Shown: positions 32,439 through 46,338 of the stretch, one piece after another
How positions within the stretch are numbered: position 1 is the stretch's first letter
How the letters are laid out: each line of letters starts with the position of its first letter
Source of the DNA: Chrysemys picta bellii
Lineage: Eukaryota
Reading direction: 5' to 3'
Assembly: GCF_011386835.1 (NCBI RefSeq)
Contig: NC_088800.1
Span: forward strand, 2,294,001 to 2,358,000
DNA length: 64,000 bases
Made by a program: the position numbers and the translations under genes
Notes under the pieces: model-generated
The model's input: the letters and a program-made list of their open reading frames with translations, nothing else
Told to the model about the DNA's origin: nothing
Databases searched by the model: none

Positions 32439-32781
32439 GGTGACAGGGTGTTTGGAAGTGGGTCCTGGCCTGGACCCCAGAGCAGAGGCTGGGACTGGGG
32501 TCTCCTGCCAGTCACAGGGAAGGGGGCCTACAAGGGTGGTGGAGCCCAGCAGGCGGAGCTGAGGAAAAGCCCCAGAAAGGGTGGAGGGATTTTTGTTTCC
32601 GTTAGAGACATTTTTAGACTTTTAGTTCGGGATGACTGGGACCCGGAAAGGGTGCACGAAAGCTGGTGTCCTGGCCGCAGGGCCGAGTTACTAGGCAGAG
32701 ACACAGTCCCAGTGCTGGCGTGACCATTGGCAGGGGGCGCTAGCCCAGCGAGAGGTCTGGCCGCGAGGGGGCACCATTACA
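32439..32781 (+). mobile_element. Solo-LTR-like segment
   Basis: (g)gtgacagggtg ... gggggcaccattaca with short terminal inverted ends and a GC-rich body resembling turtle LTRs; no TSD visible. Confidence 0.5.
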
Positions 32782-35075: not shown

Positions 35076-35964
35076 TCAGCTTAGTGAAGGTTGGTGGTGT
35101 TAAAATTAGCCATTGCAAGGATATTATGGCTAGGAAATAGTTAAAGGCTTTCCCTTCTAATTAGAGATGAGGCCAAGCTGCCAAGTGCAGGCCAGATCAG
35201 GACTTTCCCAAAGTTCTTGGTCGTCTGGTTCAGTTCCTTATATAAAGGGCAAGCCATGAAGTTCAGGGCCAAGCTTTTCCAAAGGGGAGAAGGGTTTTGG
35301 CTCCAGAGTGCGGGCTGAAATACATCTTTAGTTCCAGCTGGATGAAAGGAGAATGGGAACAGGCTGTGTTAACTGCAGACTCAGTAGATGACCTCTTCCT
35401 CACTCTGTGGAATATAGCAAACTTTTGCGTGGGCCAGAGGGGAGCTATTGGATGGCTGCATGATTACCTGACTCTGGCTGCCTGAAGGCTAGTTCGTGTA
35501 AATTGCTTTTCCTGAGATCTCCATTGAGGAATTTTATAAGTAATGGGAATTTCTGAGCTTCTGGCTTTTCCTGGCTCTGTAGGCGAGACTAGCTGTTGTC
35601 ACCCCAGAGAAAGACAGAAAAGAAATGCTGACGCTGCAGAACATCAGGAAAAACACTGTTATGTGTGAACCTTTAAAGCTGACTTGTCTTAAGACGGTGT
35701 GAGAAGGAAGCAGGAAGGGAATGCAATTAAAGTTTGTATTTTAATAGGCGATGACAGAGAGACAGAGAGTGGGAACAAAAGCCTTCTGGCAGCAGCATGT
35801 TCAATCTAGAAGTCGTTGCTGTGAAGCATTTGAGCTGGTCAATCACAAAATGAGGCCTTTGGTTAAATCTTTGTTGGAGGAGGTAAAATACATTTGTTTT
35901 TAAAATAACTCTCTGGGCCTATGTCATTTCCACTGTTATCATGAACATCTGAATAAAGTGGGTG

Positions 35965-44295: not shown

Positions 44296-44569
44296 CTGGG
44301 AATTTCAATGACTGTCAGTCTCAGGCAGTCGAACCCCATGCCAGATAAATCAATCACTTCCAGTCCAATCGCTAGAGCAATGAGAGCCTCCAAGCTGATT
44401 AAACAGAACATTCTGTCTTTTAGCTGCTGATTTCCGCATCAGCGGATACCTGGGGGCTCAGATAAAATAGCTCTTTCTTTCCAGGTTTCAGGGGTAGCCA
44501 TGTTAGTCTGTATCAGCAAAAAAACCGAGGAGTCCTTGTGACACCTTAGAGACTAACAAATTTATTTGG

Positions 44570-44609
44570 GCATAAGCTTTCGTGGGCTAGAGCCCACTTC
44601 ATCAGATGC
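44570..44609 (-). ncRNA. Minimal type I hammerhead ribozyme motif in a Penelope pLTR
   Basis: GCAU-CUGAUGA-A-GUGGGC(UCUA)GCCCAC-GAAA-GC-UU-AUGC: stem I GCAU/AUGC, full core, 6-bp stem II, palindromic AGCU stem III; predicted cut between 44574 and 44573. Confidence 0.75.
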
Positions 44610-44751
44610 ACGGAGTGAAAAATACAGGTGCAGGTATAAAGACATGAAAGGATGGGGGTTGCTTTACCAAGTGTGAGGTCAGTCTAATGAGATAAATCAA
44701 TGAACAGCAGGATACCAAGGGAGGAAAAATAACTTTTGAAGTGGTAAGAGA

Positions 44752-44957
44752 GTGGCTCATTACAGACAGTTGACAAGAAGGTGTGAGTAACAGTAGGGAG
44801 AAATTAGTATTGGGGAAATTAAATTTGGGTTTTGTAATGACCCAACCACTCCCAGTCTTTATTCAGGGTCATTACAAAACCCAAATTTAATTTCCCCCAT
44901 ACTAATTTCTCCCTACAGTTACTCACATCTTCTTGTCAACTGTCTGTAATGGGCCAC
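44752..44957. repeat. 92-bp inverted repeat with a 22-bp spacer
   Basis: Arms 44752-44843 and 44866-44957; 4 mismatches counted by hand. Confidence 0.95.
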
Positions 44958-45524
44958 AAATATCAATCAGAATGAAATGAAGGATATTGATGGAATCCCT
45001 CCCTTCGCTTCCTACGTGTCCTAGCCAAAGCCTTTCAGAGCAATTACACTGGCAATAATTTACCTTCTCTTTATTGCTGATCCTACTTTCCCCTGTGGAA
45101 TTTCCTACCAGTCATGTTACTGAAGAGTTCCTGTTTGCAAACCAGTCCTGCGCCTCCCCCCACACTGCTGATACAGGGAAAATCTGGATCTACAGATTAA
45201 AGGTGTTTGTATTAAGAAAATCATTTAAAACAACAAGTCAGAATCTTTTTTTTCCTCTCTCTTATTCAAATAGGCGAGATCTTTGACCTAACCTCATTCT
45301 GTCCACTTGCTCAGTTTTCAGGGCCATGTTTAGTTACTAAGGGAGCTTAGTTATACTTTACAAAGTTCCAGTCATGTTTCTTTAATTAAAAGAAGTGCTG
45401 TCTCTATCTAGCTATATAAAAACCATCTTGGCATTTTAACATATAAAGCATGGGAACGGAAACAGAGCTTTCCTATTTTAAAAAAAAGTTGTGAGGGAAT
45501 TTCGTGCTCAAAGACATAATGATA

Positions 45525-45700
45525 AATAATAATAACGGTACATTGTACTTTTACAGCACCTTCTGCCAAAGGATCTCAAAGCCCTTTATAAATGGTGATG
45601 AACTACAATCTCCTTGTGAGACTGGAGTTTTCCCTGTTTCACAGACAGGGAAAACTGACGAACAAAGATGCTAAGTGACTCGCTATAGGTAACCATGTTG
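45525..45700 (-). mobile_element. MIR-like CORE-SINE
   Basis: cctgtttcacagacagggaaaactgacgaacaaagatgctaagtgactcgc. Confidence 0.6.
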
Positions 45701-46217
45701 TCCCGAGTCAAGCAGAGTACCTTAAAGGGTACCGCAAGGACCCTGAAAAACCAGGACTATCCACCACACTGACCCATGCACTGTGTCCCCTGAGCAACAT
45801 GGTGATCTGCCGAGTAGAGGCTTATCTATCCCCCAGAAGGTTACTACAAATGCTGCCACCACCGGCATGAACTGGCCAGGAGTACATGCTGCTCGCGCGT
45901 GCATTCCACAGCACATCCCTGCCTGCCAGTCCAGCAGTCTCCGGCCTTAGCTTGTAGGGTTCCTGGAGAAAAGGATCTGTGTGGTGGATTTGTCCCTTCT
46001 ACCTGCAAAACCTCTGAGCACCTTTTATTGGTATATCTTATCAGTATTTGTTTAACCTTTTATGACCCGCTTCCCTTCCTAAATGAGCCCGTCACGGAAC
46101 ACGGCAGGTGCTGTGCATTCTCACCAATTCATGCTGCTCACAAATGTTCCCTGTCAGAACAGGAACCAGCAAAAGTTCAGGGACAGGCTGGCAGACGGTT
46201 GTGACAGACAGCCTTAC

Positions 46218-46338
46218 CCAGCCCCTCGCTCTCCTCGAACATCTTTTTCACAGTCTGGCAGGTGGATCCATCCCCATGGCACACCCCGCACCGATCCTCG
46301 ACAGCGTTGGAGTCAATTTCATAGTCACAGCCCACGTT
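46218..46338 (-). CDS. ADAMTS7: ADAMTS7 coding exon (Cys-rich end/spacer start)
   Basis: tttcag|AAC ... CTG G|gtaagg; 121 bp; [40 protein letters not shown]. Confidence 0.96.

What the first reader, a model, noticed from the sequence alone, without database searches (positions are those of the whole stretch)
44570..44609. Apparently intact self-cleaving hammerhead ribozyme in the ADAMTS7 pre-mRNA
The minus strand (gene sense, intron 46217-44296) reads GCAU CUGAUGA A GUGGGC UCUA GCCCAC GAAA GC UU^AUGC. All catalytic core nucleotides are present, with a 4-bp stem I, a perfect 6-bp stem II and a palindromic AGCU stem III. Penelope-like elements are known to carry such minimal type I hammerheads that cleave best as dimers. 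An extra A after A9 is tolerated in a natural viroid hammerhead. Inference: this copy could cut the nascent intron about 280 nt upstream of the spacer exon, possibly by pairing in trans with transcripts of other family copies. That would give turtle genes a repeat-borne co-transcriptional cleavage layer.
Basis: partly seen in the sequence, partly recalled or inferred. Interest (0 to 1): 0.7.

Follow-up and report, generated by a model that had tools for sequence, protein, structure and literature searches.

The report
Relic Penelope retrotransposon hammerhead in intron
The hammerhead-ribozyme motif is really there and looks intact, but it is the inherited tail of a Penelope-like retrotransposon in an ADAMTS intron, a kind described in 2014 (turtles included), and a lone copy like this very probably does not cut the gene's RNA.

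Summary
Observation confirmed. The minus (gene-sense) strand at 44609-44570 reads exactly as reported. It has a 4-bp helix I, CUGAUGA, one unpaired A, a perfect 6-bp helix II with a 4-nt loop, GAAA, a palindromic AGCU and U17. The predicted cut is 44574|44573, 278 nt before the spacer exon. It is the only such motif in the window; chance gives about 0.007 per window.

It meets every sequence feature of the published 'minimal hammerhead' of Penelope-like elements (Cervera & de la Pena 2014, which names turtle). It matches no Rfam hammerhead model. It lies about 100 nt from the 3' end of a roughly 486-bp insertion whose 5' end is a 92-nt fold-back, a layout typical of these elements.

The functional inference is not supported. 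Helix III cannot close within one molecule, and no partner copy exists in 64 kb. The modelled active dimer is less stable than two monomers. Published minimal hammerheads do not cleave as single motifs, and the Anolis one needs the element's own protein. Introns cut by slow hammerheads are still spliced.

Intactness fits a young insertion without selection. This scan has noted the same kind of motif many times elsewhere in this genome. Verdict: already known, low interest.

The parts
44570..44609 (-). Minimal type I hammerhead motif (min-HHR). Helix I is 44609-44606 / 44573-44570. The core CUGAUGA is 44605-44599, followed by an unpaired A at 44598. Helix II is 44597-44592 / 44587-44582 with loop 44591-44588. 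GAA is 44581-44579, the palindromic AGCU is 44578-44575 and U17 is 44574. The predicted cut is 44574|44573.
   Evidence: Sequence read directly. Only descriptor hit in the window; chance about 0.007 per window. The isolated 40-mer folds into helices I and II at -14.7 kcal/mol, z -2.49. No Rfam hammerhead match.
44472..44957 (-). Candidate full extent of the retroelement insertion carrying the motif (about 486 bp): 5' fold-back, about 140 nt of body, the hammerhead, then a 3' stem-loop and an AC-rich end. The 5' edge is set by the outer end of the inverted repeat. The 3' edge is tentative.
   Evidence: The inverted-repeat arm ends at 44957. GATATTT abuts the 5' edge and GCTATTT lies at 44471-44465, a weak candidate target-site duplication with chance roughly 0.15. 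There is no other copy in the window. CpG observed/expected is 0.15.
44752..44957 (-). Fold-back at the 5' end of the insertion. The 92-nt arms are 44957-44866 and 44843-44752, with 4 mismatches and a 22-nt loop. The left arm is an inverted copy of the first 92 nt of the right-hand body.
   Evidence: the repeat finder gives 96% complementarity. The RNA fold is -150.6 kcal/mol, z -23.7. An inverted 5'-truncated copy next to the 5' end is described as typical of Penelope-like elements (PMC8557442).
44499..44558 (-). 3' stem-loop of the element (outer helix UGUUAGUCU / AGACUAACA), followed by an AC-rich end at 44498-44487.
   Evidence: strand folding: -20.6 kcal/mol, z -2.55, 1 of 200 shuffles as good. 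The Anolis PLE starts reverse transcription in an AC-rich stem-loop downstream of its hammerhead (PMC11167929). Equivalence with that stem-loop is inferred, not shown.
44296..46217 (-). Host intron (GT at 46217-46216, AG at 44297-44296) between the ADAMTS cysteine-rich exon and the spacer exon. It is phase 1.
   Evidence: splice sites, reading frame. (Pfam ADAMTS_CR_3 and ADAMTS_spacer1 on the two exons, searched separately).

Best explanation
[quoted passage not shown] That element inserted, 5'-truncated and with a fold-back, in sense orientation into this ADAMTS intron.

In an active element the motif sits in the terminal repeat. It is thought to process element RNA only when two copies pair through the palindromic 15.1-16.1 segment with swapped helix I strands, and/or when the element's own protein assists.

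At this locus it is a passenger. The nascent intron most likely forms the helix II hairpin and alternative pairings. Helix III cannot form, so no meaningful cleavage occurs and the intron is spliced out normally. The motif looks intact because the insertion is young, not because the host selects for it.

Shown here: the sequence, the architecture, its non-random nature, the solo status and the sense orientation. Inferred: PLE origin, the lack of cleavage and the age.
For: Motif and class:
- The motif is exact and non-random.
[quoted passage not shown] Turtle is named as a carrier (PMC4209133).
- The Anolis Poseidon_Ac consensus, read across its tandem junction, shows the same plan: palindromic ACGU, no loop 3, and one unpaired base after A9.
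- A 92-nt fold-back sits at the 5' end of the insertion. This matches the inverted 5'-truncated copies typical of PLEs.

Why cleavage is unlikely:
- It is a solo copy. There is no second motif, even with one core mismatch allowed, and no other AGCUHAUGC substrate site in 64 kb.
- The double-hammerhead dimer scores -26.1 kcal/mol against -29.4 for two monomers, and the best dimer is an inactive extended duplex.
- Helix I pair probability is 0.28 in 101 nt of context and about 0 in 281 or 551 nt. The competent fold costs +5.9 kcal/mol.
- In the literature a single min-HHR shows no detectable cleavage, and dimers cleave poorly and mostly at non-physiological Mg. These motifs lack helix III and the tertiary contacts.
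- The Anolis PLE hammerhead is inactive without the PLE protein, and no RNA-seq reads begin or end at its site.

Why intactness needs no selection:
- The fold-back arms differ at 4 of 92 positions, about 2.2% per arm. The chance that about 25 constrained positions stay unhit is about 0.58.
- The insertion spans both sides of the cut site, so its own template RNA was uncut at this motif when it was reverse transcribed (sequence).
Against:
- PLE origin was not shown by alignment to a PLE consensus or to other family copies. None could be fetched: the metagenome, viral and prokaryote collections gave 0 hits, and an ORF-based protein search gave none.
- Nearest-neighbour energies ignore the core's tertiary structure and proteins.
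- Host chaperones, or PLE protein if any element is active in turtles, could raise activity. Many family transcripts in one nucleus could serve as partners.
- The age estimate assumes the arms were identical at birth and have not undergone gene conversion.
Confidence: 0.82

Rival explanations
1. The copy is an active ribozyme that cuts the nascent ADAMTS intron at 44574|44573. It would do so by pairing in trans with transcripts of other family copies, or with help from a chaperone or PLE protein. Such copies would together form a repeat-borne co-transcriptional cleavage layer in turtle genes.
For: - All core nucleotides and helices I and II are intact, and the motif is sense to the gene.
- PLE hammerheads are reported to cleave as dimers (citing Lunse et al. 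2017).
- The Anolis PLE motif cleaves when the PLE protein is present.
- The scan's unchecked notes list other sense intronic copies in this genome, and fold-back insertions whose arms end at the predicted cut site.
Against: - There is no cis partner in 64 kb.
- Trans pairing rests on 4+4+4 bp, and the active dimer is modelled 3.3 kcal/mol less stable than two monomers.
- A competing upstream pairing is predicted for the core.
- Single min-HHRs are inactive in vitro and dimers are weak.
- No read ends were seen at the Anolis site in vivo.
- Introns cut by a slow hammerhead are spliced as well as intact ones; only fast ribozymes abort splicing. Slow cleavage would therefore barely change mRNA output.
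Confidence: 0.05
2. The insertion matters to the pre-mRNA, but not through the hammerhead. Candidate features are the roughly 97-bp near-perfect RNA hairpin, which could be a substrate for editing or dsRNA-binding proteins, and the sense AAUAAA 8 nt after the motif, which could act as an intronic polyadenylation signal.
For: - The hairpin folds at -150.6 kcal/mol, z -23.7.
- AAUAAA lies at 44566-44561 with a U-run at 44527-44517.
Against: - There are four sense AAUAAA hexamers in this 1.9-kb intron alone, so the hexamer is unremarkable.
- No transcript data were available.
- Most intronic transposon fragments have no measurable effect (general knowledge).
Confidence: 0.08
3. A chance hammerhead-like string in unique intron DNA, unrelated to any mobile element.
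For: There is no second copy of the surrounding sequence in the window. No alignment to a PLE consensus could be made.
Against: - Chance expectation is about 0.007 per window for a relaxed descriptor and 0 of 300 for the strict one.
- The motif also carries features not needed for a chance core match: the unpaired base after A9, the G10.1-C11.1 pair and the palindromic AGCU. These are the hallmarks of PLE min-HHRs.
- It sits between a fold-back and a 3' stem-loop.
- Many similar motifs are noted elsewhere in this genome (leads only).
Confidence: 0.01

Closest known systems
Minimal hammerheads (min-HHR) of Penelope-like elements (Cervera & de la Pena 2014, PMC4209133; Lunse, Weinberg & Breaker 2017 as cited in PMC6765202)
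   Same: Core boxes. One unpaired nucleotide between A9 and 10.1. A G10.1-C11.1 pair. A long helix II (6 bp) and a short helix I (4 bp). Palindromic 15.1-16.1 (AGCU) with no loop 3. Found mostly as single motifs in truncated elements. Turtle is named as a carrier.
   Different: Nothing in the architecture differs. The link to a PLE reverse-transcriptase ORF could not be shown at this locus, which is a 5'-truncated fragment. Activity is untested.
Poseidon_Ac (PAc) hammerhead of Anolis carolinensis (PMC11167929)
   Same: It has the same minimal plan when read across the tandem junction of the consensus. It lies upstream of the site where reverse transcription starts, so genomic 3' ends fall downstream of the motif, as here.
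   Different: The sequence differs (ACGU not AGCU, and a different helix II). In PAc the ORF start lies in the motif. Here the AUG in the core opens only 18 codons. PAc cleavage needs the PAc protein, and no such protein is known to act at this locus.
Conserved intronic hammerheads of amniotes (HH9/HH10; RECK, CTCL/C10orf118, DTNB; de la Pena & Garcia-Robles 2010, summarised in PMC6155905)
   Same: A type I hammerhead lying sense in an intron of a vertebrate protein-coding gene. It is thought to derive from retroelement hammerheads, and a role in mRNA biogenesis has been proposed.
   Different: Those are canonical, monomer-competent motifs with a closed helix III and loop-loop contacts. They are conserved across amniotes, proven active in vitro, and have Rfam models. 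This motif matches none of those models even at E <= 10, has no helix III, and lies in a young repeat.
Double-hammerhead dimers of newt satellite 2 and ASBVd (Forster et al. 1988, as cited in PMC4209133 and PMC6765202)
   Same: An unstable or absent helix III that becomes a stable extended helix only when two units pair.
   Different: Those units are tandem on one transcript, giving a high local concentration. This copy is solo.
CChMVd (+) hammerhead with an extra A between A9 and G10.1 (De la Pena & Flores 2001, as cited in PMC4209133)
   Same: An extra unpaired nucleotide at the same place in the core.
   Different: That one is a viroid type III hammerhead with full helices. The shared trait is only this one nucleotide.

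Membership tests
PLE minimal hammerhead (min-HHR, Cervera & de la Pena 2014) | Catalytic boxes CUGANGA and GAAA, U16.1, and H17 that is not G | tested here: met
   CUGAUGA at 44605-44599, GAAA at 44581-44578, U16.1 at 44575 and U17 at 44574
PLE minimal hammerhead (min-HHR, Cervera & de la Pena 2014) | [quoted passage not shown] | tested here: met
   A at 44598; G 44597 pairs with C 44582.
PLE minimal hammerhead (min-HHR, Cervera & de la Pena 2014) | No closed helix III; palindromic 15.2-16.2 allowing an intermolecular helix III | tested here: met
   AGCU at 44578-44575 with no loop. The domain-swapped dimer can be drawn without a pseudoknot, though it scores only -26.1 kcal/mol.
PLE minimal hammerhead (min-HHR, Cervera & de la Pena 2014) | Short helix I (4-5 bp), poorly defined loop 1, and a larger than usual helix II | tested here: met
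   Helix I is 4 bp and is not extendable beyond a U/C mismatch. Helix II is 6 bp.
PLE minimal hammerhead (min-HHR, Cervera & de la Pena 2014) | Lies in the terminal repeat of a Penelope-like element, or in a truncated copy of one | tested here: inconclusive
   The 5' fold-back and the 3' stem-loop fit PLE insertions. There is no RT/GIY-YIG ORF here, and no family copies or consensus could be aligned.
PLE minimal hammerhead (min-HHR, Cervera & de la Pena 2014) | Self-cleavage (as a dimer) at H17 | not testable with these tools
   This needs in vitro transcription or end-specific RNA sequencing.
Rfam hammerhead families (Hammerhead_1, _3, _II, HH9, HH10) | Covariance-model score at or above the gathering threshold | tested here: not met
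   No hammerhead match at gathering on the window. None at E <= 10 on 401 nt or on 71 nt.
Domesticated intronic hammerheads of amniotes (HH9/HH10 type) | A monomer-competent fold: closed helix III and helix I/II loop contacts | tested here: not met
   There is no loop 3 and no helix I extension or internal loop. Helix I pair probability is about 0 in 281 nt or more of context.
Domesticated intronic hammerheads of amniotes (HH9/HH10 type) | Conservation of the motif at the orthologous intron across species | not testable with these tools

The most novel reading that the evidence does not exclude
Sense-strand intronic copies of this minimal hammerhead, this one included, are cleaved in turtle nuclei. 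Cleavage would happen when a second family transcript, a host chaperone or an expressed PLE protein supplies the missing helix III or folding help. Thousands of relic copies would then form a conditional, repeat-borne cleavage layer on pre-mRNAs, coupled to retroelement activity.
Probability: 0.04. Interest if true: 0.7.

Novelty: already known. Interest (0 to 1): 0.12.

Why it matters
As it stands this is one more copy of a repeat-borne motif that was catalogued in 2014, so it adds little. It would matter only if lone intronic copies were shown to cut host pre-mRNAs in vivo. That would make retroelement ribozymes a genome-wide modifier of gene expression in reptiles, fishes and amphibians. 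It would also help settle the open question of what PLE hammerheads do. One small, usable point comes from this locus: the insertion spans the cut site, so its own template RNA was reverse transcribed uncut. That agrees with published evidence that cleavage is not needed for PLE insertion.

Tried and rejected
- **Rfam.** No hammerhead family matched at the gathering threshold or at E <= 10. I take this as a limit of the models for loop-less helix III motifs, not as evidence against the motif.
- **Other copies in the window.** blastn and pattern searches found none. The one other GATGA...GAAAGCT string, at 32631-32664, lacks the core and is chance. A core-mismatch candidate at 35204-35227 has no helix I/III context and was dropped.
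- **Family copies from public collections.** Two metagenome scans, two viral scans and one prokaryote-genome scan all gave 0 hits. These collections evidently hold no reptile DNA.
- **ORF-based retrieval.** A word search with the 52-aa ORF upstream of the motif found no candidates.
- **Supplements of PMC4209133.** None are held, so the published turtle motifs could not be compared letter by letter.
- **An apparent match to PAc.** The AUG in the core lies 26 nt before the cut, as reported for PAc. On reading the PAc consensus, its AUG starts at A9 and ours at A6, so this is a coincidence of lengths. I rejected it.
- **Alignment to Poseidon_Ac.** This was left out because that sequence has no reference id here and would have to be typed. 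Only a by-eye comparison was made.
- **Paralogue identity (ADAMTS7).** Not tested.

Full report
**What is there.** In standard hammerhead numbering:
- Helix I is 44609-44606 paired with 44573-44570.
- C3-A9 is 44605-44599, followed by an unpaired A at 44598.
- Helix II is six Watson-Crick pairs (44597-44592 with 44587-44582) closed by UCUA.
- G12 A13 A14 is 44581-44579.
- A15.1 G15.2 C16.2 U16.1 is the palindrome AGCU at 44578-44575.
- U17 is 44574, so the scissile bond would lie between 44574 and 44573.

I scanned both strands of the window with my own descriptor. It required the core boxes, an optional bulge, helix II of at least 4 bp, 0-6 nt inside helix III, H17, and helix I of at least 3 bp. 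It found this site and no other. Markov-1 random windows gave 0.007 hits per window, and none in 300 for the strict version. The motif is real and not a chance string.

**Gene context.** The upstream exon ends ...EESEGLG followed by gtaagg at 46218|46217. The downstream exon starts after ...cccag at 44296|44295 with [15 protein letters not shown]. Searched separately, the two exons match Pfam ADAMTS_CR_3 (E 5e-5) and ADAMTS_spacer1 (E 9.6e-21). I did not test whether the gene is ADAMTS7 rather than another paralogue, and I built and searched no joined exon model.

**What kind of hammerhead it is.** No Rfam hammerhead model matches it. That holds at gathering thresholds on the whole window and at E <= 10 on 401 nt or on 71 nt around it. 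It does fit, feature for feature, the 'minimal hammerhead' (min-HHR) that Cervera and de la Pena defined in 2014 for Penelope-like elements (PLEs). Their features are:
- the two catalytic boxes;
- the G10.1-C11.1 pair;
- the palindromic nature of 15.2-16.2 with no loop 3;
- a larger than usual helix II.

That paper states that similar motifs are conserved in reptiles, 'turtle and snakes'. It also says most motifs occur as single elements, probably from truncated PLEs (PMC4209133). The Repbase consensus of the Anolis PLE Poseidon_Ac, printed in a supplement, shows the same plan when read across its tandem junction: CUGAGGA, one unpaired U, a helix II, then GAAACGUC with a palindromic ACGU and no loop 3.

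**The element around it.** The motif lies inside what looks like a single insertion of about 486 bp (44957-44472, minus strand).
- *5' end.* This is a fold-back. The 92 nt at 44957-44866 are an inverted copy of 44843-44752, with 4 mismatches and a 22-nt loop. As RNA it would form a hairpin of -150.6 kcal/mol.
- *Body and motif.* About 140 nt of body lead into the hammerhead.
- *3' end.* A stem-loop at 44558-44499 (-20.6 kcal/mol, z -2.55) is followed by an AC-rich end.
- *Fit with PLEs.* Craig et al. (PMC8557442) describe high 5' truncation and an inverted 5'-truncated copy immediately next to the 5' end as typical of PLE insertions. The Anolis study places the start of reverse transcription in an AC-rich stem-loop downstream of the hammerhead (PMC11167929).
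- *Target-site duplication.* A possible one exists (GATATTT at the 5' edge, GCTATTT at 44471-44465), but a match of that size is expected by chance about one time in seven.

I could not align the element to a PLE consensus or to other copies. The window holds no second copy. The public DNA collections at hand gave no hits to two family-specific patterns, and an ORF-based protein search gave nothing. Earlier notes of this scan report many such motifs in PLE fragments elsewhere in this genome. I treat those as leads only.

**Can this copy cut?** Several independent lines say probably not.
1. *Geometry.* A15.1 to U16.1 are four consecutive bases, so helix III cannot close within one molecule. Activity needs a second copy that supplies the other AGCU strand and swaps helix I strands.
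2. *No partner.* No other motif exists in the window, even allowing a core mismatch, and there is no other AGCUHAUGC substrate-like site. That covers 19 kb upstream and 44 kb downstream in gene sense.
3. *Energetics.* The domain-swapped double hammerhead evaluates to -26.1 kcal/mol against -29.4 for two separate monomers. The best predicted dimer (-36.5) is an extended, inactive duplex. These numbers ignore tertiary structure, but they show that the 4+4+4 bp interface offers no driving force for pairing in trans.
4. *Context.* Helix I has pair probability 0.28 in 101 nt of context and about 0 in 281 or 551 nt. The already-transcribed segments 44690-44683 and 44632-44628 are predicted to pair with UCUGAUGA and GUGCA. 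Forcing the competent fold costs 5.9 kcal/mol.
5. *Published biochemistry.*
   - A single min-HHR showed no detectable cleavage. Dimers and trimers showed low cleavage, mostly at non-physiological Mg.
   - PLE hammerheads lack helix III and the tertiary contacts that make natural hammerheads fast.
   - Reviews note very low rates even as dimers.
   - The Anolis PLE hammerhead showed no cleavage without the PLE protein. Catalytic mutants did not affect insertion, and no RNA-seq reads began or ended at its site.
6. *Consequence.* When an intron is cut in vivo by a hammerhead, splicing proceeds about as well as with an intact intron. Only fast ribozymes abort it (Dye et al. 2006 and Bentley and co-workers, as summarised in PMC2995048). 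A slow, occasional cut 278 nt before the exon would therefore be expected to change mRNA output very little.

**Why it looks intact.** The two fold-back arms were presumably identical when formed and now differ at 4 of 92 positions, about 2.2% per arm. At that divergence, the chance that about 25 constrained positions of the motif escaped any hit is about 0.58. Intactness is what a young neutral copy would show, and it needs no selection. The insertion is also continuous across the cut site, from about 280 nt upstream to about 100 nt downstream. The RNA it was copied from was therefore uncut at this very motif when it was reverse transcribed. This follows directly from the sequence. It agrees with the Anolis result that unprocessed RNA is the main substrate for insertion.

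**What could not be done.** Expression of the intron, read ends at 44574|44573 and family copy number all remain untested.

**Comparison and verdict.** The motif is a member, by every sequence criterion that defines it, of the PLE min-HHR class. It is not a member of the canonical or domesticated intronic hammerhead families (HH9/HH10), whose models it fails and whose monomer-competent fold it lacks. The idea that intronic hammerheads act in mRNA biogenesis is itself already in the literature for those conserved motifs. In Xenopus, about 44% of related hammerhead-bearing repeats lie in introns, so an intronic copy is ordinary.

- The identification as a PLE-type dimer-dependent hammerhead is right.
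- The inference of co-transcriptional cleavage at this locus is unsupported, and the available evidence disfavours it. I put it at about 5%.
- This is an already known kind of feature, seen repeatedly by this scan in the same genome, and of low interest. The genome-wide tests listed under next steps could change that.

Noticed in passing
window 44752-44957: A near-perfect fold-back: 92-nt arms, 4 mismatches and a 22-nt loop, with an RNA fold of -150.6 kcal/mol. It forms the 5' end of the same insertion. It would put a roughly 97-bp double-stranded RNA into the pre-mRNA about 140 nt upstream of the hammerhead. Its shape suggests snap-back priming or an inverted 5'-truncated copy at insertion.
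   Followed up: partly
window 44561-44566 (minus strand): A canonical AAUAAA lies sense to the gene 8 nt after the predicted cut site, with a U-run at 44527-44517. It could in principle act as an intronic poly(A) signal. Three other sense AAUAAA hexamers lie in the same 1.9-kb intron, so it is unremarkable by count.
   Followed up: partly
window 44487-44558 (minus strand): A stable 3' stem-loop (outer helix UGUUAGUCU / AGACUAACA, z -2.55) is followed by AC-rich ACAUGGCUACCCCUGAAAC. The Anolis Poseidon_Ac consensus has AACATGGCCAC shortly after its own hammerhead, against AACATGGCTAC here. The spacing from the cut site differs (19 vs 69 nt), and a match of that size has roughly a 0.1 chance. 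This is only a lead to homology of the reverse-transcription start region.
   Followed up: partly
window 44683-44690 and 44628-44632 (minus strand): Upstream segments within the element are predicted to pair with the hammerhead's UCUGAUGA and GUGCA. That would sequester the 5' half of the core in the longer transcript. It could be a built-in off-state of the element's RNA or just a prediction artefact.
   Followed up: partly
window 44546-44602 (minus strand): The AUG inside the CUGAUGA box opens an ORF of only 18 codons before a UAA. In the Anolis element the long RT ORF starts within the hammerhead, at A9 (here the AUG starts at A6). This turtle copy therefore does not carry an ORF start of that kind, or it derives from a non-autonomous family.
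   Followed up: yes
window 32631-32664 (+) and 35204-35227 (-): Two weak hammerhead-like strings turned up in relaxed pattern scans. Neither has a full core with helices I and III, so both were judged chance.
   Followed up: yes
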